From Haliotis rubra (lineage: Eukaryota), in assembly GCF_003918875.1 (NCBI RefSeq), contig NW_025765033.1, forward strand, positions 1-64,000: DNA of 64,000 nucleotides, in the 5' to 3' direction. The position numbers and the translations under genes are program-made. How positions within the stretch are numbered: position 1 is the stretch's first letter; every line of letters begins with the position of its first letter. Of the stretch, positions 1,947 through 38,814 are shown in pieces. The notes beneath the pieces are model-generated. The model made no database searches. It was given only the letters and a program-made list of their open reading frames with translations, and was not told the DNA's origin.

Positions 1947-2082
1947 TAATAACCTAAGCAATGCCCATCGACTATGAGACAGAAGAATGGATGTAACACA
2001 GACTCAGAAAACATATCCTCAAAAGAGGAGGTATATTACATTATTTCTGTTATGTACAATTGTTTCATGCATATCATATAAA

Positions 2083-11500: not shown

Positions 11501-11709
11501 ATCAATAAATTGAATAATTAGATTCACCTGTTTGATATGTACTTCCAAATCTGTTGCTTCTTGCTGTTGGTCACAAGTGATGAAAATGAGCTAAATAAAT
11601 TAGACTTATGGTTCTCCACCTCATCAACTAAACAATACATCTCGTTCCGAGTCCAGTTGACTTTTCTCGCTTTCTTTTCTGCGGTCGCCATCTCGCTTGA
11701 GCTTGACAT
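8586..11709 (-). CDS. Harbinger accessory Myb/SANT-like DNA-binding protein; exons ~11528-11709, 11024-11088, 10314-10410, 9974-10041, 9521-9706, 9046-9091, 8586-8786
   Basis: RKVNWTRNEMYCLVDEV...TNSKKQQIW|VSACGSSIRSSEDVKKKWTTLK|SDSRRK...QTGGGP, plus a C-terminal coiled coil (LEREKVAIMRERLQIDRERL). GT-AG boundaries; two 1-nt homopolymer frameshifts. The middle exons are less certain. Confidence 0.85.
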
Positions 11710-12404
11710 TTTCACGTCTGCTCGGGGATTTCCCAAAAAGCTGTGACGTCATATGGGAAATCCCTTCGCTTTTCTATCTCACCGACTGAAGAGCTCGCTA
11801 TCCAAGTTAGGACAGGGATAGGATCGTTTCGAGAATGGGTCTTATCTTAAAGTTAGGATGTCCTAACTTCTGTCCTAACTAGTTAGGATCTGTCTTAGCT
11901 GGGACACTTTCGAGAATAGGATACTATATCTCATAGCGTGTGTGACCGGGGCTATGTACTCAGACATTCCCTGATACTGTTTCGTTAAAAACCTCCTTTC
12001 AACCTCACCCATTAACCCTCCTTTCTCCCACCCTCCCCACTCACCGATGTAGCGTCCCCTGGCTTCGTCCCCGAGCCCCTCTCCCGACCCCCTGAGTGTT
12101 TTCACCCCGTTCTGGGCTTCTTTTGTCCTTGTCGAAGTCGTCTCATGCATACCCGCGACGTGATATGTTACTTACTCTGTTATGGTGTGCTGAAAGTCTG
12201 TCCCCGGGTACCCTCTCCCATTTACACATTAACATTTCTTTCTAACAATCTATCAGCATGCTTGTCGTTGGATAGTATATCTCACAGCGTGTGTGACCAG
12301 GGGCTATGCACTCAGACATTCTCTAACACTGTTTCGTTAAAAACCTCCTATCAACCTCACCCATTAACCCTCCTTTCTCCCACCCTCCCCACTCACCGAT
12401 GTAG

Positions 12405-12629
12405 CGTCCCCTGGCTTCGTCCCCGAGCCCCTCTTCCGAGCCCCTGAGTGTTTTCACCCCGTTCTGGGCCCGCCCTGACCACGGCGAGACGCTCCCTGCC
12501 CCAGTCACCATCACCTATGTCGACTATTACCCTGTCCCAAGTGACGACGACAGTGACTACTGGGTCTATGAGGATGAGGACGACGACAGCTGGAGAGTGG
12601 CTGCCTTCTTTAGGAGAGTATTCTCGTAG
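12405..12629 (+). pseudogene. Isolated exon 3 of the orphan gene, with an in-frame 36-bp deletion; exons 1-2 absent
   Basis: 225 nt versus 261 nt in the intact copy; reads ...EDEDDDSWRVAAFFRRVFS*. Confidence 0.55.
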
Positions 12630-13256
12630 ATTCCTCATCCAGAGTGTGCATGTGTGCGCGCGCGCGCGCGTGTGTGCATAGGTGTAAACGTGTATGTGTG
12701 ATTCGATGTATTTGTGCAAGAGTGCATGTTGTGTGATTGGGTGTGCATGTGAGTGTATGCGATTTGCATGTGCATTTGAATGCAGATGAGAGAGATAGTG
12801 TTTTTCATGTGACAGAGCGTGTTATAGATGTGTGATTGGGTGTATGTGTGAGAGGATGTGTGTGAGAGAGAGAGAGAGGGGGGTTAGAGAGAATATGTTT
12901 TCATGGGCCATTTAGTGTGATTGTGAATGCGTGATGATGAGTTTTGCATGTATGTTCGTGTGTAAGTGTTTTGTGTGAGATGATGTGTTTTGGTGCTCGT
13001 CTGGTATACCATTTCCCATTTTTGGTCTCTTTTGGCTACACCCTTTTGGCTTATTTCAGGACACACCCTTTCGATCAAGTATATTTTGGCTTACCTTTTG
13101 ACTGACATTTCTAAGTTTATTTCTCTTCTAATAAGAGAATTGATCTTCCCTCAGCACTTGCCATTCTATTTCTTGATTATATGTAAATAAATATTAATGA
13201 ATGGTATACACATGAGTCTGTTTTCCTTCCTTGATTGGATCAATTCCAATTCTTAG

Positions 13257-13399
13257 CTAGGTGACAGCAACACAGCAGGAGAGGCAGCCGAAGCAAGCCT
13301 ATTTTTGAAATATCTTGGAGTTGCTATAAGAGTAAACTAATTACAAATGAAGATAATGAAGGGTCATTTGCTCTATCCCGCTGTGTTGCTGTCACCCAG
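13257..13399. mobile_element. MITE-like element inside the tandem unit (also at ~17248-17389, and split at ~21238/23339)
   Basis: ~26-bp terminal inverted repeats CT(A/G)GGTGACAGCAACACAGC(A/G)GGA(G/T)A. Confidence 0.65.
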
Positions 13400-15351
13400 A
13401 TGAGTGTATTACACGTTTTTTGTGATGGAAATCACGAAGTCTGTACTCGTGTGTAGCCATGGCTACAAACCTGATGTCGGATGACTGGATATTTTACGAT
13501 GGCTTCACTTGCTATACGTTACATGCACACGGGAATAATCGAGAGTAGTCTCCCCATTGCTCAGTGTAGCTGTTTAACCGCCCCTTGTTCTGTGGATGTT
13601 TATACACGTTCTGAGACTGGCAGAGGGGATTTCCTCCTCGCCTAATGCTCATTTTCAATCCAGGTAATAGACATAATAATAAGTGCCTTGTATGATACTT
13701 GGACAGGATTGGTGCCCTTTACTTCGAGGTCAAATATGGGCTACAATACACAATATCAGCGATGTGAGTGAGTGAGGTAGATCAGGTTCACTGACCAACT
13801 CCATGCACGGACAACCCGTGCTGACTGTCACAACAGGTCGATCATTACGAGCAATGCAGGTTACACTATGTCTTATAACTAGACGCACCGCTATCTAATC
13901 GCGCGAGCAGGTTAATTAGCTTTAATTTACTGTGTATTTGGAGGGAACGGATGGACCAGTCTCTTGTCCAGCTTGCTCGCGGCCCTATGCACAAGGGAGA
14001 CTACCCTTGTCAGCTTATTAGCGCGCGTTTATCAGCCAGGCAGGCCTCAGACCACAATTATTTTCCTTCTTTGCTATCTACAGTGACATGCCAGTGCACC
14101 ATAATTAATATCGGTCGTAGGCTGTTCTCCTGTTGCATGCTGACCAACCTTCCACTTGTCATTTAACCGGCAAAATATGGGCCTGGATCGACCATGTCAA
14201 TTTTGCTGTATCCACTGTAAACAATGGTCACGGGAAGTTACGAGCCGAAACACACTAGACAGCCTTGAACTTGGGGTCAAATCAAGGAAGGCTGGTGTCA
14301 ATACCATGTGTAGATTGTGGACCCAAAAAATTTTGCAATAAAGTACAATGTCTTACCTTTCATTTAAGCTATCACAAGTCACCCTGAAAAAATTAGCACA
14401 AACAGAACAGCCCATTTAAACAAGGCACTATATTCTCATATTTTCCTTCCGGGTCATGGTAAAACTTAAGGGGGGTAACTGTGGTCTGAGGCCTGTGTCC
14501 GAGGCGAAGTGCGCCGCTTGTCTTTCCGCAGCAATTAGTGCCGCTACCGGCATCCTTAAACGTACACCACGCCCTACACACCACCAGACAGTCCCCACGT
14601 CAGATGAATGGACATTGTCAGCAACTACCTACATTCACCAGTTTGCCAGTTAATACTCGTTGTTCAAACAAACACAACATGCACTTCTTTTTATCACCGA
14701 CGGGAACCATGACAACGGCCTTCAAAGCAGGATCTGCTTCCTTTTGTTCTGGCGTTTGATTTCAGCCGTCAGTAAGTCCAGTGTCCATGACAAGAAATGG
14801 TCCCCGTCAAGAAATTATGTCCTCTGTATTTCAGCTTCACGCAGATGTCTTTAATCCCGAAGTACATCTATCCATTATTGCTGGCACAACAAGCATATAG
14901 ACTACAACTTCTCTGTCGGAGATAAACATAAGTGAATTAGCGAAAAGGGAATCGGAAGACTTGCACTTTTCTGACTGAAAACGAATCCTTAACCTTCTCC
15001 TTATTAGCACTAATCTTTACACGGTTTCAGAGAGTTAATAGTGTGTTTTCAACATCTAACAGGTACGGCGTTTTCGTGAACTACGGTATGTCCGGTGTTT
15101 GAACATATAGGCATTGATTTAAAACCTTAAAGTCGCCAGTGGTATTTGGCCCCATGACATGCAGCCATGGCCGGCTGTTTGACGTTGCCGAAAACATTCG
15201 ATGACGCCTCGTTCTGACTTCGTCTCTATGTAGTTACCGTTGTCGTTGCCAACGGTCCCTCTGTTTTTTAACAGAATCGCCATTGCTCTTACTACCTATC
15301 GCTCTGCATTTCGTTGACTACAGCATCGTTCCGAGTTCTGCTACTGACAAG

Positions 15352-16542
15352 ATGTTTACAAGGCTGCATATTCAAGGTATTTAAGCAGACATTCATTGTA
15401 TTTTAAAGTGTTAAGAGCGTACATTAGTACTGAAATCGGCCATAGTTTGACAGTAACGGTGTGGATGCTACTGGCCGCCATTTGCAATTTTGGGGAAATT
15501 TAGAAATGTTGATCTTTCTAATGTCTTTCTACAAGTAAATTGAGAGCTGTCGGTATTTATGTACTATGGCGGATGTTGTTACATGACAATAGATGTTTTT
15601 AGTATATTTAAGACGTGGATTTGGTATATTGTTTCTTTAAACATTTCTTTTCAACTATGCGGAGTATAGTAGCATTACTAATAGATGGATTGTATATCAA
15701 AACAATGATTAAATGCCCAGATGAATTCCTCTAACGCATTTTCGAGGCCTATGCTTGTCCCCAAAGACTCTCTATTTTCTTGCTATCGTTTCAACGGCCT
15801 CAAAAACATTTTGGTTCCACTGTACATGTATTTGGTGTGTCTATAAATGGGTTGTTTGTGTTATTTTCAGCACGGGAAGACATGATACGGTATCACGTCA
15901 CTCCTGCTGCTAGTCTATGGCCGTCGCTGGATGAGGAATCCGACTGTGTATGTATTTTCTCGACATGACCTTCAGACTGGTCCGAAAGCTTGCTTCTTTT
16001 CTCCTTGTCGAAGTCGTCTCATGCATACCCGCGACGTGATATGTTACTTACTCTGTTATGGTGTGCTGAAAGTCTGTCCCCGGGTACCCTCTCCCATTTA
16101 CACATTAACATTTCTTTCTAACAATCTATCAGCATGCTTGTCGTTGGATAGTATATCTCACAGCGTGTGTGACCAGGGGCTATGCACTCAGACATTCTCT
16201 AACACTGTTTCGTTAAAAAACCTCCTATCAACCTCACCCATTAACCCTCCTTTCTCCCACCCTCCCCACTCACCGATGTAGCGTCCCCTGGCTTCGTCCC
16301 CGAGCCCCTCTTCCGACCCCCTGAGTGTTTTCACCCCGTTCTGGGCCCGCCCTGACCACGGCGAGACGCTCCCTGCCCCAGTCACCATCACCTATGTCGA
16401 CTATTACCCTGTCCCAAGTGACGACGACAGTGACTACTGGGTCTATGAGGATGAGGACGACGACAGCTTCGTGGAGGATATTCACCCCGTTAGGAAGGCG
16501 CTGAGGAGAGTGGCTGCCTTCTTTAGGAGAGTATTCTCGTAG
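15352..16542 (+). CDS. Predicted three-exon orphan gene, 120 aa (exons 15352-15376, 15871-15947, 16282-16542)
   Basis: Splice sites CAAG|gtattt, ttattttcag|, TGT|gtatgt and atgtag| join in frame (phases 1 and 0) from ATG to TAG. AATAAA at ~17177. Confidence 0.6.
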
Positions 16543-16807
16543 ATTCCTCATCCAGTGTGCGTGTGTGTATGTGTATGTGTGTAAGTGTGTGTGCGCGCGT
16601 GTATGTGTGCATAAGGGTAGACGTGTATGTGTGATTCGATGTATCTGTGTATGTGTGCAAGAGTGCATGTTGTGTGATTGAGTGTGCATGTGAGAGTATG
16701 CGATTTGCATGTGCATTTGAATGCAGATAAGAGAGATAGTGTTTTTCATGTGACAGGGCGTGTTACTGATGTGTGATTGGGTGTATGTGTGAGTGTGTGA
16801 GAGACGA

Positions 16808-16839
<32 letters not shown>

Positions 16840-19332
16840 GGGTGGGCGGGTGGGAAGGGAGTGTGTTTTCATGGGCTATTTAGTGTGAGGGCGAATGCGT
16901 GATGATGAGTTTTGCATGTATGTTCGTGTGTAAGTGGTTTTTGTGAGATTATGTGTTTTGGTGCTCGTCTGGTATACCATTTCCCATTTTGGGTCTCTTT
17001 GGCTACACCCTTTTGGCTTATTTCAGGACACACCCTTCGATCAAGTATATTTTGGCTTACCTTTTGACTGACATTTCTAAGTTTATTTCTCTTACTAATA
17101 AGAGAATTGATCTTCTTTGGCCCCGATTTGGATACTTTCTTTCAGCACTTGCCATTCTATTTCTTGATTATATGTAAATAAATATTAATGAATGGTATAC
17201 ACATGAGTCTGTTTTCCTTCCTTCATTGGATCAATTCCAATTCTTAGCTAGGTGACAGCAACACAGCAGGAGAGGCAGCCGAAGCAAGCCTATTTTTGAA
17301 ATATCTGGAGTTGCTATAAGAGTAAACTAATTACAAATGAAGATAATGAAGGGTCATTTGCTCTATCCCGCTGTGTTGCTGTCACCCAGATGAGTGTATT
17401 ACACGTTTTTTGTGATGGAAATCACGAAGTCTGTACTCGTGTGTAGCCATGGCTACAAACCTGATGTCGGATGACTGGATATTTTACGATGGCTTCACTT
17501 GCTATACGTTACATGCACACGGGAATAATCGAGAGTAGTCTCCCATTGCTCAGTGTAGCTGTTTAACCGCTCCCTTGTTCTGTGGATGTTTATACACGTT
17601 CTGAGACTGGCAGAGGGGATTTCCTCCTCGCCTAATGCTCATTTTCAATCCAGGTAATAGACATAATAATAAGTGCCTTGTATGATACTTGGACAGGATT
17701 GGTGCCCTTTACTTCGAGGTCAAATATGGGCTACAATACACAATATCAGCGTGTGAGTGAGTGAGGTAGATCAGGTTCACTGACCAACTCCATGCACGGA
17801 CAACCCGTGCTGACTGTCACAACAGGTCGATCATTACGAGCAATGCAGGTTACACTATGTCTTATAACTAGACGCACCGCTATCTAATCGCGCGAGCAGG
17901 TTAATTAGCTTTAATTTACTGTGTATTTGGGAACGGATGGACCAGTCTCTTGTCCAGCTTGCTCGCGGCCTATGCACAAGGGGAGACTACCCTTGTCAGC
18001 TTATTAGCGCGTTTATCAGCCAGGCAGGCCTCAGACCACAATTATTTTCCTTCTTTGCTATCTACAGTGACATGCCAGTGCACCATAATTAATATCGGTC
18101 GTAGGCTGTTCTCCTGTTGCATGCTGACCAACCTTCCACTTGTCACTTAACCGGCAAAATATGGGCCTGGATCGACCATGTCAATTTTGCTGTATCCACT
18201 GTAAACAATGGTCACGGGAAGTTACGAGCCGAAACACACTAGACAGCCTTGAACTTGGGGTCAAATCAAGGAAGGCTGGTGTCAATATCATGTGTAGATT
18301 GGGGACCCAAAAACATTGCAATAAAGTACAATGTCTTACCTTTCATTTAAGCTATCACAAGTCACCCTGAAAAAATTAGCACAAACAGAACAGCCCATTT
18401 AAACAAGGCACTATATTCTCATATTTTCCTTCCGGGTCATGGTAAAACTTAAGGGGGGTAACTGTGCTCTGAGGCCTGTGTCCGAGGCGAAGTGCGCCGC
18501 TTGTCTTTCCGCAGCAATTAGTGCCGCTACCGGCATCCTTAAACGTACACCACGCCCTACACACCACCAGACAGTCCCCACGTCAGATGAATGGACATTG
18601 TCAGCAACTACCTACATTCACCAGTTTGCCAGTTAATACTCGTTGTTCAAACAAACACAACATGCACTTCTTTTTATCACCGACGGGAACCATGACAACG
18701 GCCTTCAAAGCAGGATCTGCTTCCTTTTGTTCTGGCGTTTGATTTCAGCCGTCAGTAAGTCCAGTGTCCATGACAAGAAATGGTCCCCGTCAAGAAATTA
18801 TGTCCTCTGTATTTCAGCTTCACGCAGATGTCTTTAATCCCGAAGTACATCTATCCATTATTGCTGGCACAACAAGCATATAGACTACAACTTCTCTGTC
18901 GGAGATAAACATATGTGAATTAGCGAAAAGGGAATCGGAAGACTTGCACTTTTCTGACTGAAAACGAATCCTTAACCTTCTCCTTATTAGCACTAATCTT
19001 TACACGGTTTCAGAGAGTTAATAGTGTGTTTTCAACATCTAACAGGTACGGCGTTTTCGTGAACTACGGTATGTCCGGTGTTTGAACATATAGGCATTGA
19101 TTTAAAACCTTAAAGTCGCCAGGTATTTGGCCCCATGACATGCAGCCATGGCCGGCTGTTTGACGTTGCCGAAAACATTCGATGACGCCTCGTTCTGACT
19201 TCGTCTCTATGTAGTTACCGTTGTCGTTGCCAACGGTCCCCTCTGTTTTTAACAGAATCGCCATTGCTCTTACTACCTATCGCTCTGCATTTCGTTGACT
19301 ACAGCATCGTTCCGAGTTCTGCTACTGACAAG

Positions 19333-20525
19333 ATGTTTACAAGGCTGCATATTCAAGGTATTTAAGCAGACATTCATTGTATTTTAAAGTGTTAAGAGCG
19401 TACATTAGTACTGAAATCGGCCATAGTTTGACAGTAACGGTGTGGATGCTACTGGCCGCCATTTGCAATTTTGGGGAAATTTAGAAATGTTGATCTTTCT
19501 AATGTCTTTCTACAAGTAAATTGAGAGCTGTCGGTATTTATGTACTATGGCGGATGTTGTTACATGACAATAGATGTTTTTAGTATATTTAAGACGTGGA
19601 TTTGGTATATTGTTTCTTTAAACATTTCTTTTCAACTATGCGGAGTATAGTAGCATTACTAATAGATGGATTGTATATCAAAACAATGATTAAATGCCCA
19701 GATGAATTCCTCTAACGCATTTTCGAGGCCTATACTTGTCCCAAAAGACTCTCTATTTTCTTGCTATCGTTTCATCGGCCTCAAAAACATTTTGGTTCCA
19801 CTGTACATGTATTTGGTGTGTCTATAAATGGGTTGTTTGTGTTATTTTCAGCACGGGAAGACATGATACGGTATCACGTCACTCCTGCTGCTAGTCTATG
19901 GCCGTCGCTGGATGAGGAATCCGACTGTGTATGTATTTTCTCGACATGACCTTCAGACTGGTCCGAAAAGCTTGCTTCTTTTTGTCCTTGTCGAAGTCGT
20001 CTCATGCATACCCGTGACGTGATATGTTACTTACTCTGTTATGGTGTGCTGAAAGTCTGTCCCCGGGTACCCTCTCCCATTTACACATTAACATTTCTTT
20101 CTAACAATCTATCAGCATGCTTGTCGTTGGATAGTATATCTCACAGCGTGTGTGACCAGGGGCTATGCACTCAGACATTCTCTAACACTGTTTCGTTAAA
20201 AACCTCCTATCAACCTCACCCATTAACCCTCCTTTCTCCCACCCTCCCCACTCACCGATGTAGCGTCCCCTGGCTTCGTCCCCGAGCCCCTCTCCCGACC
20301 CCCCTGAGTGTTTTCACCCCGTTCTGGGCCCGCCCTGACCACGGCGAGACGCTCCCTGCCCCAGTCACCATCACCTATGTCGACTATTACCCTGTCCCAA
20401 GTGACGACGACAGTGACTACTGGGTCTATGAGGATGAGGACGACGACAGCTTCGTGGAGGATATTCACCCCGTTAGGAAGGCGCTGAGGAGAGTGGCTGC
20501 CTTCTTTAGGAGAGTATTCTCGTAG
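19333..20525 (+). CDS. Second copy of the three-exon orphan gene (19333-19357, 19852-19928, 20264-20525), with +1 C in a homopolymer near 20300
   Basis: Same splice sites as the first copy. The C-run has 6 bases instead of 5, which could be real or a consensus error. Confidence 0.5.
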
Positions 20526-20795
20526 ATTCCTCATCCAGTGTGCGTGTGTGTGTATGTATGTGTGTAAGTGTGTGTGCGCGTGTATGTGTGCATAAGGGTA
20601 GACGTGTATGTGTGATTCGATGTATCTGTGTATGTGTGCAAGAGTGCATGTTGTGTGATTGAGTGTGCATGTGAGAGTATGCGATTTGCATGTGCATTTG
20701 AATGCAGATGAGAGAGATAGTGTTTTTCATGTGACAGGGCGTGTTACTGATGTGTGATTGGGTGTATGTGTGAGAGTGTGAGAGACGATGTGTGT

Positions 20796-20826
<31 letters not shown>

Positions 20827-21334
20827 GGGTGGGCGGGTGGGAAGGAGTGTGTTTTCATGGGCTATTTAGTGTGAGGGCGAATGCGTGATGATGAGTTTTG
20901 CATGTATGTTCGTGTGTAAGTGGGTTTTTGTGAGATTATGTGTTTTGGTGCTCGTCTGGTATACCATTTCCCATTTTGGGTCTCTTTTGGCTACACCCTT
21001 TGGCTTATTTCAGGACACACCCTTTCGATCAAGTATATTTTGGCTTACCTTTGACTGACATTTCTAAGTTTATTTCTCTTACTAATAAGAGAATTGATCT
21101 TCTCTTTTGGCCCCGATTTGGATACTTTCTTTCAGCACTTGCCATTCTATTTCTTGATTATATGTAAATAAATATTAATGAATGGTATACACATGAGTCT
21201 GTTTTCCTTCCTTCATTGGATCAATTCCAATTCTTAGCTAGGTGACAGCAACACAGCAGGAGAGGCAGCCGAAGCAAGCCTATTTTTGAAATATCTTGGA
21301 GTTGCTATAAGAGTAAACTAATTACAAATGAAGA

Positions 21335-23292
21335 TTAAAGTTGCAGGCAACATTGACGGCTCCTTGGCTTGGATCATTTCTAAACATTTGGTACCTGATG
21401 TCGAAAGCAGTAAAGGTTATAGCTGATATGGATCGTATCATTGTCAGTAATGAGAAATACTTCAGGAGCCGATTTTACTAGCGCTTACTTCAGCTAGACC
21501 AGAGTTACCCCCCTTAGACCACAGCTAGAACTTTTACCCTGACCCGGAACGTTCAATCACTGACAATCTTTAAAAACTGCCTAAAGACCTCCACTGCAGT
21601 GTAGTTTAATTTTGTGCAGCGCTAGCTCTCGTCATTGTCAACTGAAATCGACATCATCTCCCCATATCTGCACGTGGACCACGCTTTGCAGTGGTAGTCT
21701 CTTTATAGCAGATATCGTCCCTGCACTTTCCTTCAGACTGTCGCATGTTTTGCACGGGTAATCTGCCGTGCTCGTGCTGTAAATGTCGATGAAACTTATG
21801 ATACATTCGGCAATGTATCCCTGGGCCGTCGGTGATATAAAGAAGTCCCTATTTCGTTAAATCTGCCCAAACTTTGGGTTTTTGAATGTAAGTATTATTT
21901 ATGATGACTGGTACGTTGTTGAAAGTCTGTTTGCGTCATATTTAGCGTGTTCAGCCTGGAGTTGTGGGTGAGTTTGTTTGGTAATTTTTCTTTCATTTGG
22001 GGCACGTCTCAAACAGTTTTTTCCCTTTTCCCCTGCATTTGTGCAATTTTCAATGCCATATGGCCGACAAACGATCAAACTTTTGATATGCATGTAAGAA
22101 CACGAAATGTTAAGCATCTTCTGTTGATGCATACCTGCCAAGTTTTACTGCCTTCTGTGCAGAACTTGAGCAGCTATGCTGTTTAGAATGTAGTATCATC
22201 AGAATCTGACGAAATCCAATATGGCCGCCAAGCAATACACATTTTGACATGCACCCAAGAACAAAAATGTTCAACACACTTAGTTACTACGCACTGCCAG
22301 ATTCTAGCTGCATAGTTGCGAAAGTAATGATGCTGCGATTTTTGAAAATACATTTTAGTACAAAATAAACAACAGAAGCAAACATCTAGATATCCGTAGC
22401 TAATCAAGATATCGCAACATAGCTTATGGGCATTAATATTTGAGGTATATGTTGTACATCTGCACATTTACAGCGTTCTGCAGTTCATACATTCAGAGTT
22501 ATGGCTTGCGAAAAATGCCTACCCTACAAAATCTGCACATTTCCGATAAACATCTTCAATCCAATATGGCCGCCGCATCACGTGACTTTTGACATAGGAC
22601 CAAGAACAGAAAATGTTCAACAACCAAAGGCCACTTCAGAACAAGCGTTTAAAGTGTTGTATGTGCTAAGTTTGGTTTGGCACAAAATGGCAAAGAAGCC
22701 CGTGAAAGTTTTTGAAGACAACTTTTTGCCGAAAAGTAGCGTCCAATATGGCGGCCATCATATAAACATAGGCACATTTGACGATGCTACTGTGTAGAAA
22801 CATGCATAGACACAAAGTATGCAACGTTTGAAAGCCGTAGCCCTTGTAGTTTTAGTGCAGCACATTTTGGGAGGTATGCAGTCAGGATTTTGCTGAAAAA
22901 CATCACCAAAAACTTCAATCCCAAATAGCGTCCAAACGGTGCATTTTAGCGACTTGAGCCGTCCAGGCGAAATTGTAGGCATTTTGATTGCGCATCTGCT
23001 CCAGAACTTTGGCAAACATTGGAGCATTAGTTTTGGAGATATTTGCATTTGCGTTTGAAATTTTTGAATTAATTTTGAATTATCTGCCCTTTGCTATTGG
23101 GCCTACAGCCTACAGATTTTAAAGCGCGATATGTACACCTCGGTGGGCATCTGGGTGATTTTTTTCAAGGCATTCTGTCCAGCGGTGCTCTCTGTAGCTC
23201 TGGTACAAAATACGGCGGAAGAATAAATAATAATAATAATAAAAACATTAACGATTACAATAGGTCTCCTGCCTAAAGGCAAAGGAGCCCTA
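21335..23292. mobile_element. ~1.95-kb non-autonomous Helentron/HINE-like insertion
   Basis: Absent from the other array copies (empty site aatgaagataatgaagggtc). Subterminal inverted pair ggctccttggc / gcaaaggagcc, an (AAT)n tract, a terminal hairpin ctcctgcctaaaggcaaaggag, and no long TSD. Confidence 0.7.
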
Positions 23293-24377
23293 ATAATGAA
23301 GGGTCATTTGCTCTATCCCGATGTGTTGCTGTCACCCAGATGAGTGTATTACACTTTTTTTGTGATGGAAATCACGAAGTCTGTACTCGTGTGTAGCCAT
23401 GGCTACAAACCTGATGTCGGATGACTGGCTATTTTACGATGGCTTCACTTGCTATACGTTACATGCACACGGGAATAATCGAGAGTAGTCTCCCATTGCT
23501 CAGTGTAGCTGTTTAACCGCCCCCTTGTTCTGTGGATGTTTATACACGTTCTGAGACTGGCAGAGGGGATTTCCTCCTCGCCTAATGCTCATTTTCAATC
23601 CAGGTAATAGACATTATAATAAGTGCCTTGTATGATACTTGGACAGGATTGGTGCCCTTTACTTCGAGGTTAGGTATGGGCTACAATATCTGATCAAGAA
23701 AACCAAATGGCGTTTAGATAAGAACATAGATCAGACCTACAAGTACTGCCAGTTTGACCTGGTCTGGTCTACGCTTTAAATTTAGACAGGGAAATCGCAA
23801 TGCTCTATGCACATACGTGCGTAAATGTCCAAAATCAGTGAGTGAGTGAGTGAATGAGTATAGTAAACCCTTAGCGATAAGTTCACCATGTCACCTCGTT
23901 GAACAGAAAGAAGTCCCATAGACTTCTATAGTAGCGTTATAATTTATTATTTTTAAATCCTCCAGGCTGTCAACAACCATTCCACGTAGTAGGCATGTAC
24001 ACATGGGTACAGTCTCGCCTTTAAACTACAATAAAAACACAAATTCCCGCTAACTTAGCCTGCCATTTTTCCGAGCACAGTATGCTGAAAGCATTAGGCA
24101 TAAGCATCTTACACTATTTCATCCAGTCACACTGGTCACGTGACTCTATCTCTTCAGATGATTACATACGCAACTCGCTCATGGAGCACGTGATGCTGAT
24201 TTAGCGTAGTGGAAACCCGAGGCGAAGTGCGCAGCTTGTTTTTCCGCAGCAATTAAACGTACACCACGACCTACACACCACCAGACGGTCCCCACGTCAG
24301 ATGAATGGACATTGCCAGCAACTACCTACATTCACCAGTTTTCCAGTTAATACTCGGGGTCCAAACAAACACAACAT

Positions 24378-24785
24378 AATAATAGTAATAATAATAGTCC
24401 ACTTGTAAGGCGCTAAATCCATGCACAATACATACTGACGGCGCACATGTTTGTGAGGAGGTGACAGTAGTTACACAGAGAAGGCAAGTATGTACAGGAA
24501 GGTTTTGAGTTTTGTCTTCAACGATGACAATGATTCACAGTCTTTCAGGTACTTGGGCAGAGAGTTCCAAGCTTTTGTGGCTGAATATGCAAATGTTTTC
24601 TCCCCATAGCGGGATGTTTTTACCATGGGAACTTGGAGCAGGGCTTTTGTTCGGGAACGTCGAGTTCTTGCCAGTGTGTAGGCTTTAATCAGATCAGATA
24701 TCGAGGGAGGAGCCTGACCGGACAGAGACTGGAAGACAACACAAAGAAGTTTGTAGGTAATACGCTGTTCCACGAGGAGCCAGTA
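24378..24785 (-). mobile_element. 5'-truncated L2/CR1-group LINE 3' fragment
   Basis: WLLVEQRITYKLL...GQAP..ISDLI...YGEKTFAYSATKAWNSLP...KTKLKTFL, a (TAT)n tail, and aacat duplicated at 24373-24377 and 24786-24790. Confidence 0.88.
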
Positions 24786-27098
24786 AACATGCACTTCTTT
24801 TTATCACCGACGGGAACCATGACAACGGCCTTCAAAGCAGGATCTGCTTCCGTTTGTTTTGTCGTTTGTTTTTAGCCGCCAGTAAGTCCAGTGTCCATGA
24901 CAAGAAATGGTCCCCGTCAAGAAATTATGTCCTCTGTATTTCAGCTTCACGCAGATGTCTTTAATCCCGAAGTACATCTCTCCATTATTGCTGGCACAAC
25001 AAGCATATAGACTACAACTTCTCTGTCGGAGATAAACATATGTGAATTAGCGAAAAGGGAATCGGAAGACTTGCATTTTCTGACGAACCCTTAACCTTCC
25101 TTATTGGTACTAATCTTTACACGGTTTCAATATCTTGGCGGGCCCCGCCTAGAACCGCCACGCTCATGACAATTTGTATTTCTGTTGTACATTGCGCGAC
25201 CAACCACCCGACCAACGGAGTATATGTTTTGATAATACGTAATGAATACAAAAGGAATATAAAATATGTACAGAGTGAAAAATTCACGTCGTTTCATTTA
25301 CAAATATAGATGTTGACTTTGTCATTGAAGTTTAAACACAATTAATATAATTACTGTTTTTGTAACAGTGCTCACAACATTTCAATAATATAATCAAGTT
25401 TGTTAATACGAAAATAATTATTGTATGTAGTTAATTATGGTAAAACGGATCACTGAGTCAAAATTCACTTTGACAAAATATATTTAGATGCAATTTTGCG
25501 AAAAATACGATTTTATTAGCCCTTCATTCAATTTCTCTGAGATTTCTAGAATCAGGGGAGGTTACTCTAAGTTCTTTTCAGTTTGCCGTGTTTCATCATT
25601 GAAGACATGTTTGTTTTGGTGAGATTTGAAAGTTGGGAATATGGGCCTAACAAAATGGTATGTGTATATTTCCATTGTTAATATATAAGTGACCTCTGTG
25701 TTTGAGTAATGTTAAAGGTTAAAATATTTCTATTATGTAAATTATTTAAGTTTTATTGTAATGTTTTGGTTAAATGTATTCAGTTTTCGCGCACTTCGTG
25801 CATTTTCATCGAGTAAATTTGTGTATATTTTTATGAGGCTACGTGTAGATTAATGTAAAGTTTCTTTCTAAGATTTGAGGTAAATTTCTGATAGTATTTT
25901 AGCTGTTAAAGTAAAAATATTTTATTTATTTTCCTTTGTTTAATATTTTATTGGCTGTAATTCTCAGATTCTGAGATATGTAAAAAGTACCTATTATTGT
26001 TTTTTTAAATGTTTTTACAGTCAATCGTTTCATTCGTCGGTCAAGAATATTTTGAGAAGTGTATCCATGAATATGAACTATGACAAATGAGAACATGAAC
26101 ATGAGAACAGGAATAAAAGACACTGACGATGAGATTAATTTTCATTTTGTTTATTACAGAAATTAATAAATTAATGACTTTAAAATCACAATCATCAATT
26201 CATTTAATACTTTAAGATAAATACAATCACTGTTTTATGAAACTACCAACCTGTGTGGTATAAATAAACATTTCAATCTGATCAAACAATGAAAACTGTT
26301 TTACCTGTACACCGTGACCATATGCGCCCGACTCTAATATATTAATAAGCATAACCTATATATATATAAGATATGAGAAAGGTGTGTCAGTAAATCGAAA
26401 CAAAATGGCGGTTCGGCTCGGCTCGGTTTTGTTCTGACAAACGCTTCCATCGCTTTGACCGTTTAATAAACTGCACAATTTATACTCAGTTGACCTCTGT
26501 AAAGCGGTGATTTTGAAACCTATAAAAATCAGTAGGACAAATGTCCTGAGTGGGTGTCTGGCTATAGGCCATTGACCTAAAGCTCTTTTGACATTTTTTT
26601 AACCCCAATGCCATCATATGACTAAATTGTTAATGACATTTAATGTTGCAACTTGGATTCTAGATATACAGCAAACTTTAAGCTTTTTTCAAAGATTTAT
26701 GACTTATAAACAGATAAATGAACATCAATCACTCCTCTGTGAATAAACACTGAACAAAACAGAAGTGTTGTTATTTTTTAATATTCAGTTGTTTCAAACA
26801 GACCCTTAAAAGTGAACATGTCATAGCTTGCTTCTTTTCATCCAACTATGAAAGTACAATAATTAACACTCAATCAAACTCAGACTTGCAAACTTTAAAC
26901 TTTAAACAGTCAAAACTTCCTGGTTTCAGAAGAAAAATTGGTATGGAGTCATTTCTGCATAGTGAAGAGCAGTCTGCTCCTTTTCCTCCAACACGTCAGT
27001 GCACCTGAAAAGTCAAATTTGCACAAATCAGCCCCTTCAATCTTTACTCGCAAGAGCTTGTCCTGTGTCTCACAGGTTAGACGATTTTGAGTGGTGTC

Positions 27099-27266
27099 GG
27101 GGCGGTGGGGTAGCCTAGTGGTTAAAGCGGTGGCTCGTCACGCCGAAAATCCGGGTTCGAATCCCCACATGGGTACAATGTGTGAAGCCCATTTCTGGTG
27201 TCCCCCGCCGTGATGTTGCTGGAATATTGCTAAAAGCGACGTAAATCCAAACTCAGTCAGTCAGTC
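27099..27266 (+). mobile_element. tRNA-derived SINE family A, inserted in a hAT exon
   Basis: A box ggtagcctagtggttaaagcg, B box gggttcgaatccc, (TCAG)n tail, TSD tgagtggtgtc. Confidence 0.93.
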
Positions 27267-28688
27267 TGAGTGGTGTCAGCACACTGTTCTGTGCGCTGAA
27301 ACCCTGCTCACATCCAGCAGTGTGTACTGGGCACACTAGGGACAGCTGGGCCAACTTGAGGATGTTGGGGAACTCCTCCTTGTTGAACTCATTCACAAGT
27401 GACAACAGATTAACTGTGTTATCCCATGGATACATCTGAGCTAGGACCCTAGGTTTCAGCTGCTTCCACTCAATCCTGGTGGCTTCTGGCTCTATCACAG
27501 GCTGGCTTGTGGTCTCTTCCTCATTGCCTTGGTCAGTCCACTTGTGAGTCTGAGGATATCCAAAGTGACCAATGAGACACTCCAGTTGCTCACACCCCCA
27601 TTTCTCCAGCTCAGTCTCAGACAGGAAACTGATTGGTCTCATACCCAATATTCCAAATGCTGTCAAGATGTCAGTATCTGGAAACCTAGAAATCAGAGTA
27701 TGAAATTCAAACTACAGGTAATACTATATGAAGGAATGATCAACATATTCAAATGGTATAAATAATTATATCACACTCAGTTAATAAATTTCATGTTTAA
27801 GTTTCATCAAAAATCTAAACTTATCCAATTTCAAGGCCTTGAGTAACATACAAACCTTTGAGAAATGTTGGCAATCAAGTTGTCCAGGAACTTTTCCTTT
27901 GCTGACTGAACATCTCTCTTTGGACAACAAGCAACAGTGTTCTCCTTGTACTTCTTCTGGTCCATGTCCAGATGGTCATCCAGCAGGAGCTCGTGCACGC
28001 CTGGTTCCGTCTTCAGGGACTCCAGGGTCCTCAGACACTCATCAAGGTTCACCTTAAACAGTTTGGTGATCATTATCATTGATTACAATGTTCAAATCAT
28101 CTTTAAAAGTTCAAAAAGTTAACGAAATGATGTTACAATGTCAATTTCCATGAAAACAAGAATTGCATTAGAATGAGCTTTAATCTAAAATTCATTCACT
28201 CTTAAATTGTGTATGATGCCATGGTAATTTCAGGTGATATTGATAGCTTTACGAGCTCAGGATAGTATAGCTTTTGAAGTTGGTGTAAAGTATAAGATTA
28301 TCTATAATATTTATTTACCTTTACAAGAGCCACATCAACATTTTCTTTTTGGAAGAACAGGTTCAGTTTTCCAACAACTGGAATAATGTCCATGAGGCAG
28401 TAAGTCAAACTGATGAACTTTGCAGATGCAATCTGAAACAAAAATAAAACATTTAAATAAAAAATTACTAAAAACATTTTTGGTCAAAATTTAACTTAAA
28501 TGAAACATAATACATAATTACGTACCTGAAAATGATTCCAATGCAAAGTGCACTGTATGTTTAACCACTTGTAGAGAATCTTTGAATATTTTAAGAAAAT
28601 AAGCTTGATTTAATTTGTCACTTACTTAGTGTTATTGAGAACTCAATTGAATATTCAATACAAGTCCTTTGTCTCTCGAATGGTTTAT

Positions 28689-28854
28689 GGGGCGGTGGGG
28701 TAGCCTAATGGTTAAAGCGTTGGCTCGTCACGCCGAAGACCCGGGTTCGAATCCCCACATGGGCACAATGTGTGAAGCCCATTTCTGGTGTCCCCCGCCG
28801 TGATCTTGCTGGAATATTGCTAAAAGCGGCGTAAAACCAAATTCAGTCAGTCAG
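28689..28854 (+). mobile_element. SINE family A, in a hAT intron
   Basis: Same consensus; TSD tcgaatggtttat. Confidence 0.93.
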
Positions 28855-28912
28855 TCGAATGGTTTATCCATCAAATGCAAACAGAATCAAACTGCAGCTG
28901 TAAAAGTAAAGA

Positions 28913-29055
28913 AATCAAATCAAGTGAAATTGAATTTAATCAAATCCAAATAATCAAATCAAATCAAAATAATCAAATCAAATCAAATCACAATAATCAA
29001 ATCAAATCAAATCAAATCAAATCAAATCAAATCAAATCAAATTAAATCAAATCAA
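28913..29055. repeat. (AATCA)n microsatellite
   Basis: Visible pentamer run. Confidence 0.95.
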
Positions 29056-29528
29056 AAGAAACAGACACGAAAAGGATAATAAAATACAATGCTACTTATC
29101 ATTTTCAGACAAAAGTAAACTGACATGAATTATCTTCGATAAGTTTAAAAAATGGAGAATAAATTATAATTACCTTCTTTTTCAAACCAATGGCTTTGGC
29201 ATCACTAAGACTGACATTAGTGAGATAAGCCAATAATGTTTCTAGCGTTCTATACACTGTTTCAAGCGCATTATAAAAGCTGAGCCATCTAATGCTGTGA
29301 ACCTCCTTGTACCGGAGCTGAGGGGAATCAAGAATTTTCTGAACTTCTGATATCCGCGAGATCTTGTTTGGGGAGTATTTGAAGTAGTAATAAATGGAGG
29401 TGACCACTTCTTGATAATCCTTCAGGGCTGGAAGCTTCTCAGCTGCTTGGCTGGTACAGAGAGCAAGTCGGTGTGCTACACAGTGGATGTTGATCATATG
29501 TAGGTTGATCCTTTTCATCATGCCGTTG

Positions 29529-29694
29529 GAGGCGGTGGGGTAGTCTAGTGGTTAAAGCGTTGGCTCGTCGCGCCGAAGATCCAGGTTCGAATCCCCACAT
29601 GGGTACAATGTGTGAAGCCCATTTCTGGTGTCCCCCGCCATGATGTTGCTAGAATATTGCTAAAAGCGGCGTAAAACCAAACTCAGTCAGTCAG
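29529..29694 (+). mobile_element. SINE family A, inserted in a hAT exon
   Basis: TSD tcatcatgccgttg; it separates ORFs 29687-30604 and 29105-29521. Confidence 0.93.
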
Positions 29695-32140
29695 TCATCA
29701 TGCCGTTGACCCCTCTACCACAACCGGTCATGACCGCGGCACCCTCTGGGGCTAGCCCCATCACTTTTCCACTGTCTATTCCCCTCTTTTCCAATTCGAG
29801 CCAAATGGTGTAAGCAATAGCCCTGCCTGTTCCCTCTTGTAAGTGAATATTTGTCAAAAATCTTGTCGACGGCATCATTGTGATTGGATCCAATAATTGC
29901 ATGTAAATGCAGAGGCGTTTTTCGACACAGATATCTGTACTTTCATCTGCTAAAACAGATACAGCTGGGGACTTCTGAAGAGAGGTAGTTACTTGTTGGT
30001 CAATGGTGTCAGATATGGCTTCAAGAAACTCAGTTGCTACATATGATGATGTGTAATTAATTCCATCAGAAGCCATCAAATAGCCAATGTCTGGAACCTT
30101 TAATTCCTGCAAAAATTCAATGAGAGACTTGAATTTTAACAGAGGTATGCCTTCTTTAGTGAGCCAGTAAGCTGCTTTCAATCCAATGACAGCCCCTTTT
30201 TCCTGGTCACTGTGACATTTTTTCTTAGCTTCCTGGAACTGTGTTTGGAGTTGTGGGGCAATTAGAGACGCCTGGTGATCACTGGTTTTCATATGGTCAT
30301 TCAGAGAACTGGTCCTGTAATTTGTACATCCATCAGTGAATGTGTTTCGTCTCCCGGCACTCATACACGATGTGCATGACATGCCCCGCCCATCTTCGTA
30401 TGCAAGCCAAGGGTACAACTTTAACCATCGGTCTTGGAAGGCTCGTTTCTGGGGTTTTTCTACTTCCTCTCCGTTAATAGGCTCTGGTATGTCTGTTTCA
30501 TCAGGCTGATCAGATACAGATCTTGCGCCAAACGATAGAGTGGTTTGCCCTTTCAATTTCATTCGTTTTTTAGGTGGCATCGTTCTGCAATCAACGATCA
30601 GCAATGGAATGTTGGGGATTCCGCGAAGCTACGAAGCATTAATCTGATTGGCCAAGAAGAGCCAATCATGCCAGCAGTTACATACAATTGCGGGTGGGTC
30701 GGGAAACCCCATCTCTGATTGGCCAATGCTTAAAATAGCCAATCGCGCAATCCAATACATGTACATTTGGCAGCTTATTGTGATAAAAATGGATGCGTAA
30801 ACACGTACACGCTGCGGAAACATGATCAAGATTTCGTGGTTAGTTTTTGATGAATTTGTAAATGACAATGTTCGTAATTTATTAGGTCCATATGTGAAAA
30901 TAACATCGAAATTATCGATCGGCCCGAGTGTCCTAATTAATAAGAAAGTAGTCGGTCATTTGAAAATGTTATCGGACTATGACCGAAGGCCGATGACAAT
31001 CTGAAACCCTGTAAAGTACCTTGCGTATCACAAACCTGATGATTTTATTCCCATTTAAAGCTTTCAATAATTTTGCCGTCCATTCTCGGATGAAGTCAGG
31101 ACATATGCCCGGAAGTAAACAAATCTCAGGCTACAGACCCGCACCGAATAGTAGAGCGAGTCTCTGATTGGATAGCGTCTTCTATTATTCCCACCTCTTT
31201 TAACGTGCAACTATATTATCCAATCAGAGACTCGCTCTACTATTCGATTCGGGTCTGTAGCCTGAGATTTGTTTACTTCCGGGCATTTGTCCTGACTTCG
31301 TCCAAGAATGGACGGCAAAATTATTGAAAGCTTTAAATGGGAATAAAATCATCAGGTTTGTGATACTTTATCGGGTGCCAACTGAGTATAAATTGTGCAG
31401 TTTATTCAACGGTCAAAGCAATGGAAGCGTTTGTCAGAACGAAACCGAGCCGGGCCGCCATTTTGTTTCGATTTACTGACACACCTTTCTTATATCTTAT
31501 ATATATAGGTCATGCTTATAAATATATCGGGCGCCTATTCTGTACACAAAGTAATACATATGGCCAAATTTAAAGAAATGTAAAGAAAAACATCAACACA
31601 GGGAAATATTCATGAAATTGTCGTCTGTATTGTCATATCGTTATCGATTTACATTTGTAGATTTTATCCATCAGAAATGTAGAGGATATCGCAATGCATC
31701 AATGCCACTATTTTTAGCCTGGTGTTTTTCAAAACTGCTATATTTTATTTAACAATACTTCGATGTCATTGTGGAAAGGTAACCTTTTTCAAGGAGAAAT
31801 AGAATTGACAGAGGTAATTTGAGAATTGACTTTAAAATATTCCAGACACAGTGACTGACAGCCTTTGAAATTACTGGATATTTTAACTTTTTACTTGTCA
31901 AAGTCTGGTATATACCGGTAAACGGAAACACTGCAAACCGCTTTTGACCAAACCGTATACAGTTCTGACATAAACGGCAACAGTTTCACTTTTATACAAC
32001 TCACTTGCTGTATTAAATAATTAATAATAATACAGAGAAACATACATAGGTAGTGTAACTAGTAAGAAAATAAATAAAGTAAATTAATTAATAATGATAT
32101 AATGTTAATTAATATCTTTTAATTATATTTTCTTCTTTTA

Positions 32141-38620: not shown

Positions 38621-38814
38621 CATAATTGTCAAAATTGTAAACTGCTGGTCAAAAGTAAATTTAATATACACTTGAAAATTAGATTTAACAGCAACATTAC
38701 CAAACATTATCAAAACGTTACATTGCCGAAAACAGCCGTGGAAATACTGGGCTCCAAAACAACTAAATGTATACGTGTATCAATTACCATACCATTGAAT
38801 ACTGTTTATTGGTT

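What the first reader, a model, noticed from the sequence alone, without database searches (positions are those of the whole stretch)
15352..20525. Tandemly amplified, spliced orphan gene with an acidic core and a basic amphipathic C-terminal helix
Seen in sequence: each ~3.98-kb unit has three segments with canonical GT-AG sites that join in frame to MFTRLHIQAREDMIRYHVTPAASLWPSLDEESDCRPLASSPSPSSDPLSVFTPFWARPDHGETLPAPVTITYVDYYPVPSDDDSDYWVYEDEDDDSFVEDIHPVRKALRRVAAFFRRVFS* (120 aa). There is a YY1-like CCGCCATTT in intron 1, a (GT)/(GA)-rich 3' UTR and an AATAAA. The ORF track shows only fragments of this. The last 17 residues alternate hydrophobic (V, L, V, F, F, V, F) and basic residues with helical periodicity, and there is no signal peptide. 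Inference: a young multicopy gene family whose product may bind membranes, with the Asp/Tyr-rich segment possibly masking the cationic helix. I recognise no homolog. This is the best candidate for an undescribed system in the window.
Basis: partly seen in the sequence, partly recalled or inferred. Interest (0 to 1): 0.78.

Follow-up and report, generated by a model that had tools for sequence, protein, structure and literature searches.

The report
Abalone-specific tandem orphan gene family
This is a real, spliced and expressed abalone-only gene for a small acidic, probably disordered protein ending in a basic amphipathic helix; other abalone genomes already list the family as 'uncharacterized protein', and only one of the roughly three copies in this window is intact.

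Summary
The 3-exon, 120-aa reading frame exists exactly as described, but only in copy 1 (15352-16542). Copy 2 has an extra C in exon 3, which stops the frame after 58 aa. The upstream copy lacks exons 1-2 and has a 36-bp deletion. So 'each unit joins in frame' is wrong, and the window holds about 2.5 units, not a large array.

The gene is real. Exon 3 matches 120-145-aa RefSeq 'uncharacterized proteins' of Haliotis asinina, H. rufescens and H. cracherodii. There the same 3-exon unit forms head-to-tail arrays with a 3.2-4.4 kb period. The window's splice sites, projected onto 52 unit models, are always GT..AG, and 47 give intact ORFs. dN/dS between arrays is 0.07-0.16, and the exons are the best-conserved part of the unit. 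RNA-like contigs show the intron-1 joint, the exon 2-exon 3 junction and a 3'UTR that ends before a conserved AATAAA.

An exhaustive profile search found no credible relative outside Haliotis. Pfam, PDB and Atlas found nothing.

The protein is acidic (pI 4.5) and modelled as coil except for a C-terminal helix (net +6, hydrophobic moment 0.61). Its function is unknown. My best guess is a cytosolic protein without a signal peptide, whose helix docks on anionic membranes or partners. The find is ordinary to moderately interesting.

The parts
11919..15189 (+). 5'-truncated, rearranged upstream unit (copy 0). It begins in intron 2, has no exon 1 or 2, and is about 95% identical to copy 1.
   Evidence: Self-BLAST. 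Exon hits.
12405..12629 (+). Exon-3 relic of copy 0, with an in-frame 36-bp deletion (12 codons lost just before the helix) and one Asp-to-Glu change.
   Evidence: Alignment A1.
15190..19171 (+). Complete repeat unit (copy 1), 3,982 bp.
15199..15300 (+). Conserved promoter-proximal and 5'UTR block. Abundant transcript coverage begins at about 15270-15340.
   Evidence: Alignment of seven units. Depth bins.
15352..15376 (+). Exon 1 coding part (ATG plus 8 codons and 1 base), copy 1.
   Evidence: Intron-1 joint seen in runs X13 and X7.
15474..15489 (+). Invariant 16-mer GCCGCCATTTGCAATT in intron 1, with a YY1-like core.
   Evidence: Identical in the window and in six units from three species, while its flanks diverge.
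15871..15947 (+). Exon 2, copy 1.
16282..16542 (+). Exon 3 coding part with stop codon, copy 1. It encodes the Pro/Ser-rich middle, the acidic-aromatic tract and the C-terminal helix.
   Evidence: An X13 contig runs from 15947 straight into exon-3 sequence.
16543..17200 (+). 3'UTR with imperfect (GT)n and (GA)12. The poly(A) signal AATAAA is at 17177-17182.
   Evidence: X10 contigs cover 16612-16727 and 16938-17168.
17243..17394 (.). 32-nt inverted repeat in the spacer (hairpin-like).
19171..21335 (+). First part of copy 2, 98.4% identical to copy 1.
19333..20338 (+). Copy 2 gene. Exons 1 and 2 are intact (19333-19357, 19852-19928). Exon 3 starts at 20264 and carries a +1 C in the run 20299-20304, giving a premature stop at 20336-20338. 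It is a pseudogene unless this is an assembly error.
21336..23292 (.). 1,957-bp insertion that interrupts copy 2 in the loop of the spacer hairpin. It is absent from all other units.
23293..25129 (+). Fragmented remainder of the copy 2 spacer (23293-23688, 24217-24377, 24786-25129), with foreign sequence between the pieces.

Best explanation
What it is (shown, about 0.9): copy 1 is an intact member of an abalone-restricted, tandemly arrayed gene family. Copy 2 is a frameshifted member and copy 0 a truncated one. Each unit carries a small 3-exon gene that is transcribed, spliced at the predicted sites and polyadenylated after a conserved AATAAA. Its 120-124-aa product is under purifying selection along its whole length. 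Units within an array are kept nearly identical, by concerted evolution or recent amplification, while arrays diverge between loci and species.

How it most likely works (inferred, about 0.3-0.35): the protein has no signal peptide and is strongly acidic. It is probably largely disordered and stays in the cytosol. It carries conserved aromatic/acidic short motifs (FTPFW; SDDDSDYWVYEDEDD). Its 17-18-residue cationic amphipathic C-terminal helix acts as a reversible anchor to negatively charged membrane surfaces or to a partner. The adjacent tract, with net charge -12, either masks the helix electrostatically or is the working end that binds cations or basic partners. The many copies and the very high transcript depth in one sample suggest the protein is needed in bulk in a particular tissue or state.
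For: Homologues and their arrangement:
- Exon 3 matches H. asinina XP_067685017 (E 1e-47, 95% identity) and H. rufescens LOC125376035 (E 3e-33, 74%). The two clusters hold 13 and 26 RefSeq 'uncharacterized' members.
- The genes form head-to-tail arrays: H. asinina, period about 3.3 kb over 70 kb, plus three more arrays; H. rufescens, 3.2-3.5 kb; H. cracherodii, 4.4 kb.
- The window's splice sites, projected on 52 unit models, all show GT..AG, and 47 give intact 120-124-aa ORFs. All length differences are in frame.

Selection:
- dN/dS is 0.07 (95% CI 0-0.22), 0.16 (0.07-0.34) and 0.14-0.15 (0.07-0.28) against the three species. No bootstrap replicate reached 1.
- Introns are 53-73% identical and the coding sequence 82-96%. 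Conservation along the unit peaks on the exons.

Transcription:
- The GT..AG joint 15376/15871 appears in X13 (2 contigs, depth 1201) and in X7.
- An X13 contig runs from 15947 directly into exon-3 sequence. It carries the same three variants seen in other X13 exon-3 contigs.
- X13 exon depth is 7,000-61,000, against 0-1,600 over the introns.
- X10 3'UTR contigs end just before AATAAA.

Protein features:
- pI is 4.5. Net charge is -12 for residues 77-101 and +6 for residues 102-120.
- For the 18-residue segment 103-120, the hydrophobic moment is 0.61, reached by 0.18% of shuffles.
- AlphaFold2 models coil plus a helix at 103-119.
- There is no hydrophobic N-terminal core and no transmembrane segment.
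Against: - No experiment or localisation data exist for this family, and no paper mentions it.
- The AlphaFold2 'disorder' rests on a shallow alignment of 28 very similar sequences (mean pLDDT 60). A fold could have been missed, and the high conservation of many aromatic residues would fit one.
- A basic amphipathic helix can equally be a protein-binding module or a released peptide.
- H. rufescens and H. cracherodii 'X1' isoforms start inside intron 1 with a moderately hydrophobic N-terminus, so a secreted form in those species is not excluded.
- Expression cannot be assigned to copy 1. The abundant X10 3'UTR contig carries copy-2-type indels at 17035 and 17115. The transcripts may therefore come from copy 2 or from copies outside the window.
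- The runs are labelled RNA only by guess. The contrast between exons and introns, and the joints, argue that they are RNA.
Confidence: 0.6

Rival explanations
1. Host-defence peptide precursor. The cationic amphipathic C-terminal 17-19 residues would be the active, membrane-disrupting peptide. The anionic tract in the same chain would keep it harmless until proteolysis or cell lysis releases it. Tandem amplification would provide the dose.
For: - The helix has net charge +6, hydrophobic moment 0.61 and mean hydrophobicity 0.35. The segment immediately before it has net charge -12.
- An anionic pro-piece followed by a cationic peptide is the usual layout of many antimicrobial peptide precursors (my knowledge).
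- The gene is multicopy and reaches very high transcript depth in one sample.
- Some H. rufescens isoforms have a hydrophobic N-terminus.
Against: - The 120-aa form has no signal peptide.
- There is no dibasic or furin-type site before the helix (…EDIHPVRK…).
- The helix is under purifying selection (dN/dS 0-0.28), not the diversifying selection common in such peptides. The N-terminal and acidic parts are conserved even more strongly (dN/dS 0-0.14), which is unexpected for a mere pro-piece.
Confidence: 0.17
2. The C-terminal helix is a protein-docking module, for example a calmodulin-type basic amphipathic target helix, or a phosphorylation-controlled tail with the conserved terminal Phe-x-Arg-x-x-Ser. 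The acidic-aromatic tract would carry short linear motifs for other partners. The protein would be a soluble adaptor or regulator and not membrane-bound.
For: - Basic amphipathic helices of this size are the classical calmodulin targets (my knowledge).
- Invariant aromatic and acidic positions are spread over the whole chain.
- dN/dS is low in every segment, which fits several binding motifs.
Against: No motif was tested with a tool, and no partner is known. The very high copy number and transcript depth fit a bulk or stoichiometric role better than a regulatory one.
Confidence: 0.13
3. Ampliconic, possibly germline-expressed 'conflict' gene. Small acidic disordered proteins encoded in large, homogenised tandem arrays would be selected for dosage in gametogenesis, with no conventional cellular function. 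The window holds a decaying outpost of such an array.
For: - There are several arrays per genome, with near-identical units within an array (dS 0.004-0.016) and divergence between arrays.
- Transcript depth differs more than 1000-fold between samples.
- The window locus is flanked by transposon remnants, and two of its three copies are damaged.
Against: The tissue of expression is unknown because run metadata are coded. Strong purifying selection on the protein shows that the sequence matters, not just the dose. This rival overlaps with the others and does not exclude them.
Confidence: 0.08
4. Not a functional gene: a non-coding repeat or transposon fragment with a chance open frame.
For: - In this window two of three copies are broken.
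- The locus lies among transposon remnants.
- The spacer holds a hairpin-like inverted repeat.
Against: - Splice sites and the frame are conserved in three other species, dN/dS is 0.07-0.16, and conservation peaks on the exons.
- Spliced transcripts are seen.
- The unit has no transposon protein domain and no Rfam family.
Confidence: 0.02

Closest known systems
RefSeq 'uncharacterized protein' family of Haliotis (e.g. H. asinina XP_067685017 and XP_067684667; H. rufescens LOC125376035, LOC125376175 and LOC125372355; H. cracherodii XP_071106956)
   Same: Full-length similarity: three differences in 120 residues to the H. asinina member P0008, and 74-81% identity to the North Pacific type. The three exons, splice positions and phases are the same. 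The genes form head-to-tail arrays of 3.2-4.4 kb units, with the same invariant intron-1 16-mer and the same poly(A) signal.
   Different: The window protein is not identical to any listed member, and no protein from the window's own genome turned up. The locus here is small (about 2.5 units) and partly degraded. Non-coding DNA is only 75-85% identical to the sampled H. asinina arrays.
FITZAP / sp6 of abalone sperm (PMC6952181)
   Same: A small, highly anionic, intrinsically disordered protein found only in abalone. It works by charge complementarity with strongly cationic partners.
   Different: According to the paper, FITZAP has two exons, a signal peptide, an N-terminal poly-Asp run, a mass of about 6 kDa, and is stored in the acrosome. 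The protein here has three exons, no signal peptide and 120 aa, and the cationic element is on the same chain. I did not compare the sequences. This is an analogy, not membership.
Precursors of cationic amphipathic alpha-helical antimicrobial peptides with anionic pro-pieces (general class; from my knowledge)
   Same: A cationic amphipathic helix of about 18 residues sits next to a strongly acidic segment. The genes are multicopy and tandem, and expression is high.
   Different: There is no signal peptide in the 120-aa form and no recognisable processing site. The helix is conserved and not diversifying, and the rest of the chain is conserved at least as strongly.
Ampliconic families of small acidic disordered proteins such as vertebrate GAGE/PAGE (from my knowledge)
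   Same: Proteins of about 120 aa that are acidic and disordered, encoded by homogenised tandem units a few kilobases long, and restricted to one lineage.
   Different: No sequence relation was found. The tissue of expression is unknown here, and no C-terminal amphipathic helix is described for those families.

Membership tests
Haliotis 120-124-aa 'uncharacterized protein' tandem family (RefSeq) | Significant similarity over the full length of the protein | tested here: met
   E 1.4e-47 with 95% identity and 100% coverage of exon 3; the whole 120 aa aligns, with three differences from P0008.
Haliotis 120-124-aa 'uncharacterized protein' tandem family (RefSeq) | Same three-exon structure, with splice sites at homologous positions | tested here: met
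   the window's exon borders, projected onto 52 unit models in L001-L009, all show GT..AG and reproduce the RefSeq proteins.
Haliotis 120-124-aa 'uncharacterized protein' tandem family (RefSeq) | Head-to-tail tandem units of a few kilobases | tested here: met
   The window period is 3,981-3,982 bp. Relatives have periods of 3.2-4.4 kb. The window holds only about 2.5 units.
Haliotis 120-124-aa 'uncharacterized protein' tandem family (RefSeq) | Intact reading frame in the copy at hand | tested here: met
   Copy 1 is intact. Copy 2 is frameshifted and copy 0 truncated.
Cationic alpha-helical antimicrobial peptide precursors | N-terminal signal peptide | tested here: not met
   the most hydrophobic 8-residue stretch in the first 30 residues averages 0.95 on the Kyte-Doolittle scale. 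No dedicated predictor was available. H. rufescens X1 isoforms do have a hydrophobic start.
Cationic alpha-helical antimicrobial peptide precursors | Cationic amphipathic helix of about 12-30 residues | tested here: met
   helix at 103-119, net +6, hydrophobic moment 0.61.
Cationic alpha-helical antimicrobial peptide precursors | Processing site that releases the peptide, and antimicrobial activity | not testable with these tools
   By eye there is no dibasic site before the helix. Activity needs a bench assay.
FITZAP / sp6 | Two exons, a signal peptide and an N-terminal poly-Asp run | tested here: not met
   Architecture taken from PMC6952181. Here there are three exons, no signal peptide, and the acidic tract is near the C-terminus.
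Transposable element or non-coding satellite | Transposon protein domains, or no coding constraint | tested here: not met
   No Pfam domain. dN/dS is 0.07-0.16. Conservation peaks on the exons.

The most novel reading that the evidence does not exclude
The family would be a new, abalone-specific class of self-neutralised proteins made without a signal peptide. A membrane-active cationic helix would be held in check by an adjoining polyanionic, aromatic tract in the same disordered chain and released by an ionic or proteolytic trigger. It would serve as bulk host defence or as a membrane-remodelling agent, and would be produced from dozens of homogenised tandem genes.
Probability: 0.15. Interest if true: 0.6.

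Novelty: new member of a known kind. Interest (0 to 1): 0.4.

Why it matters
The family is restricted to one genus, present in dozens of tandem copies, strongly constrained and sometimes very highly expressed, yet it has no domain, no structure, no literature and no known function. Families like this are where lineage-specific biology hides in molluscs. This one is small enough for direct tests with a synthetic tail peptide, GFP fusions and proteomics. It also exposes two annotation problems. The locus appears unannotated in the window's genome. In H. cracherodii, one RefSeq model fuses the third exons of nine separate genes into a 655-aa protein. The find itself is not surprising, because tandem orphan families are common in abalone genomes.

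Tried and rejected
- Pfam and NCBIfam scans of the product found no family.
- Rfam found nothing over the whole window.
- A PDB profile search gave only noise, with E of 0.9 or more.
- The ESM Atlas best score was 0.76 to a phage cluster, which is noise by the tool's own calibration. The first Atlas call failed because the machine was busy.
- The exhaustive profile search of 1.84 billion representatives gave three hits beyond Haliotis: one from a soil read set, one annotated as a bacterial BamE lipoprotein and one unnamed metagenome (ENA) protein. All are long repeat proteins that collect score over 4-9 stretches from short PFW-type motifs. I rejected them as spurious.
- I did not search folds with the AlphaFold2 model, because it is almost all low-confidence coil and matches would be meaningless.
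- Paper searches for the motif FTPFWARP and for six LOC identifiers found nothing.
- FITZAP was considered and rejected on architecture.
- I could not learn the tissue of the expressing samples, because run metadata are coded.
Full report
**1. What is in the sequence**

A self-comparison shows a 3,982-bp direct repeat.
- Copy 1 is one complete unit at 15190-19171.
- Copy 2 starts at 19171 and is 98.4% identical up to 21335. A 1,957-bp insertion (21336-23292) then interrupts it. Only fragments follow, at 23293-23688, 24217-24377 and 24786-25129.
- Copy 0 is an upstream unit at 11919-15189, about 95% identical. It begins inside intron 2 with a short internal duplication.

The window therefore has about 2.5 units, not a long array. 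It contains no N.

**2. The reading frame**

In copy 1 the three segments 15352-15376, 15871-15947 and 16282-16542 have GT..AG borders. The stop codon is 16540-16542.

Copy 2 keeps exons 1 and 2 but has six C at 20299-20304 where copy 1 has five. With the same acceptor, the frame ends after 58 residues. A C-run is a classic site of assembly error, and I could not test this. Copy 2 also differs by a nearby T-to-C change that matches the H. asinina consensus, so it is a distinct copy.

Copy 0 has no exon 1 or 2. Its exon 3 lacks 36 bp, which is 12 codons just before the helix.

The claim that each unit joins in frame is therefore wrong. One copy of three is intact.

**3. Relatives**

Exon 3 finds two protein clusters: H. 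asinina XP_067685017 (120 aa, 95% identity, E 1e-47) and H. rufescens LOC125376035 (140 aa, 74%).

The clusters hold 13 and 26 distinct RefSeq 'uncharacterized proteins' of H. asinina, H. rufescens and H. cracherodii, 120-145 aa long. They align over their whole length, and many positions are invariant, including most aromatic residues.

In H. asinina the genes tile 70 kb of one chromosome head to tail, about every 3.3 kb. At least three more arrays lie on the same chromosome, with periods of 3.8, 4.0 and 4.3 kb. H. rufescens has arrays of 3.2-3.5 kb units and H. cracherodii one of 4.4 kb units.

The window unit is 75-86% identical in DNA to the sampled H. asinina arrays. It is therefore another locus or, more likely, another species. 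Earlier notes of this scan (s1-347340, s1-335053) name the genome as blacklip abalone, Haliotis rubra. I confirmed only the genus. No protein from the window's own genome appeared in the searches, so the locus seems unannotated there.

**4. Is it coding?**

I projected the window's exon borders onto 52 unit models in the fetched loci. Some loci overlap, so some units are counted twice.
- All 52 have GT..AG at both introns.
- 47 give intact ORFs of 120-124 aa.
- Four are frameshifted and one is cut by the end of a locus.
- Length differences between subfamilies are all in frame.

Nei-Gojobori dN/dS of the window gene, (one search gave means of 0.09, 0.17 and 0.15 over all unique sequences per species):

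| Compared with | dN/dS | Bootstrap 95% CI |
|---|---|---|
| H. asinina | 0.07 | 0-0.22 |
| H. cracherodii | 0.16 | 0.07-0.34 |
| H. rufescens | 0.14-0.15 | 0.07-0.28 |

No bootstrap replicate reached 1.

Every segment is constrained. In the two more diverged comparisons, the N-terminus and the acidic tract are the most constrained (0-0.08). The Pro/Ser-rich middle and the helix are less so (0.26-0.38).

Introns are 53-73% identical, against 82-96% for the coding sequence. A seven-unit alignment shows conservation peaking on the three exons and the promoter-proximal block.

Within an array, units differ at dS 0.004-0.016. Between arrays or species, dS is 0.16-0.70. This is the pattern of concerted evolution or recent amplification.

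**5. Transcription and splicing (contigs, so presence only)**

- Run X13 (organism C) has two contigs with the GT..AG joint 15376/15871, at depth about 1,200. Run X7 (organism A) has one.
- An X13 contig ends at 15947 and continues with 29 letters that are the start of exon 3. These carry three substitutions (16289 T>A, 16294 T>G, 16304 G>C), the same variants seen in other X13 exon-3 contigs. This is the exon 2-exon 3 junction in a relative or paralogue.
- X13 depth over the exons is 7,000-61,000, against 0-1,600 over the introns. This shows RNA and very high abundance in that sample. X1 and X7 show depths of 2-30.
- X10 (organism B) matches the window exactly over 116 bases. Organism B is also the species label of the best DNA holders. 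X10 covers only the 3'UTR (16612-16727 and 16938-17168, depth up to 1,560) and stops just before AATAAA at 17177-17182. That signal is conserved in all units.
- The main X10 3'UTR contig carries indels of the copy-2 type at 17035 and 17115. Expression therefore cannot be assigned to copy 1 in particular.

The runs are RNA only by the tool's guess. The joints and the contrast between exons and introns support RNA.

**6. Regulatory details**

It is identical in the window and in six units from three species, while its flanks diverge. The resemblance to a YY1 site is from my knowledge and is untested.

A conserved block upstream of the ATG (15199-15260) contains TGACG and two inverted CAACGG motifs.

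**7. The protein**

- Size and charge: 13.9 kDa, pI 4.5, net charge -11, with 11% Pro and 11% Ser.
- Residues 77-101 have net charge -12 and residues 102-120 have +6.
- The 18-residue tail (103-120) has a hydrophobic moment of 0.61 and mean hydrophobicity of 0.35. Only 0.18% of shuffles reach that moment. The H. rufescens tail has a moment of 0.56 and charge +5.
- AlphaFold2 with the 28-sequence alignment gives mean pLDDT 60 and pTM 0.18. The model is coil throughout except a helix at 103-119 (pLDDT 72-77). The alignment is shallow, so 'disordered' is a weak inference.
- The N-terminus has no hydrophobic core, and there is no transmembrane-like stretch.
- The longer 'X1' isoforms of H. rufescens and H. 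cracherodii start inside intron 1 and read through the acceptor. They have a moderately hydrophobic start. The window has no ATG for such a form.

**8. Absence of other relatives**

A profile of the family was scored against 1.84 billion representative proteins. It returned:
- the family itself;
- one 655-aa H. cracherodii RefSeq model, which fuses the third exons of nine tandem units, each of which holds an intact 122-aa three-exon gene;
- three long repeat proteins (one from a soil read set, one annotated as bacterial BamE, one unnamed metagenome protein) that I regard as spurious.

Pfam, NCBIfam, PDB sequences and the ESM Atlas gave nothing. No paper holds the motif or the LOC names. Other gastropod genomes could not be searched at the DNA level.

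**9. Interpretation**

Shown: this is a real, spliced, expressed, selectively constrained, Haliotis-restricted tandem gene family. The window holds one intact and two damaged copies among transposon remnants: a LINE at 1987-5320 and hAT pieces at 27253-30604.

Inferred, about one chance in three: the protein is cytosolic, has no signal peptide, and is acidic and largely disordered. Its cationic amphipathic tail docks reversibly on anionic membranes or on a partner. The adjoining polyanionic, aromatic tract acts as a mask or as the working end.

Rivals are a host-defence peptide precursor, a protein-docking (calmodulin-type) tail, and an ampliconic germline gene. 'Not a gene' is essentially excluded for the family.

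**10. Comparison and novelty**

The gene is a member of an already catalogued but wholly uncharacterised RefSeq family, and all four membership features I tested were met. It is not FITZAP, judged on architecture. It fails the signal-peptide criterion of classical antimicrobial peptide precursors. I file it as a new member of a known kind, with moderate interest (0.4).

Noticed in passing
L009:6001-48476 (H. cracherodii GCA_022045235.1, JAJLRC010000004.1): RefSeq XP_071118469 (655 aa) appears to be a mis-merged gene model. It strings together the third exons of nine tandem units, yet each unit holds an intact three-exon 122-aa gene.
   Followed up: yes
window 1987-5320 (+): Non-LTR retrotransposon ORFs with an endonuclease (Exo_endo_phos), a reverse transcriptase (RVT_1) and zf-RVT domains.
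   Followed up: partly
window 27253-30604 (-): Remnants of a hAT-type transposase: zf-C17orf113, DUF4371 and the hAT dimerisation domain.
   Followed up: partly
window 50978-56277: Large satellite block. A 44-bp unit is repeated 73 times (50978-54232), followed by a related 44/22-bp array (54515-56277). The first array shows strong G-over-C and A-over-T skew.
   Followed up: no
window 37509-39191: A 171-bp tandem repeat (5.2 copies, 97% matches) is followed by a 45-bp repeat (8.9 copies, 92% matches).
   Followed up: no
window 15199-15260: Promoter-proximal block conserved across all seven aligned units. It contains CGATGACGCC (a TGACG core) and two inverted CAACGG/CCGTTG motifs. Any transcription-factor assignment is from memory and untested.
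   Followed up: partly
window 17243-17394 and 21336-23292: The spacer holds a 32-nt inverted repeat with an 88-nt loop. In copy 2 a 1,957-bp sequence found nowhere else in the window or the fetched loci is inserted in that loop.
   Followed up: partly
window 16938-17168 (run X10): The most abundant 3'UTR contig of the same-species run carries the copy-2-type indels (+T after 17035, +TCT after 17115) plus others. The transcripts therefore come from copy 2 or from copies outside the window.
   Followed up: partly
window 24471-24794 (-): A 107-aa ORF in the broken tail of copy 2 resembles, from memory only, the C-terminal tail of a LINE ORF2. Pfam found nothing.
   Followed up: partly
window 11524-11736 (-): A 70-aa ORF just upstream of the truncated copy looks, from memory only, like a Myb/MADF-type DNA-binding fragment of a transposon-associated gene. 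It was not scanned.
   Followed up: no
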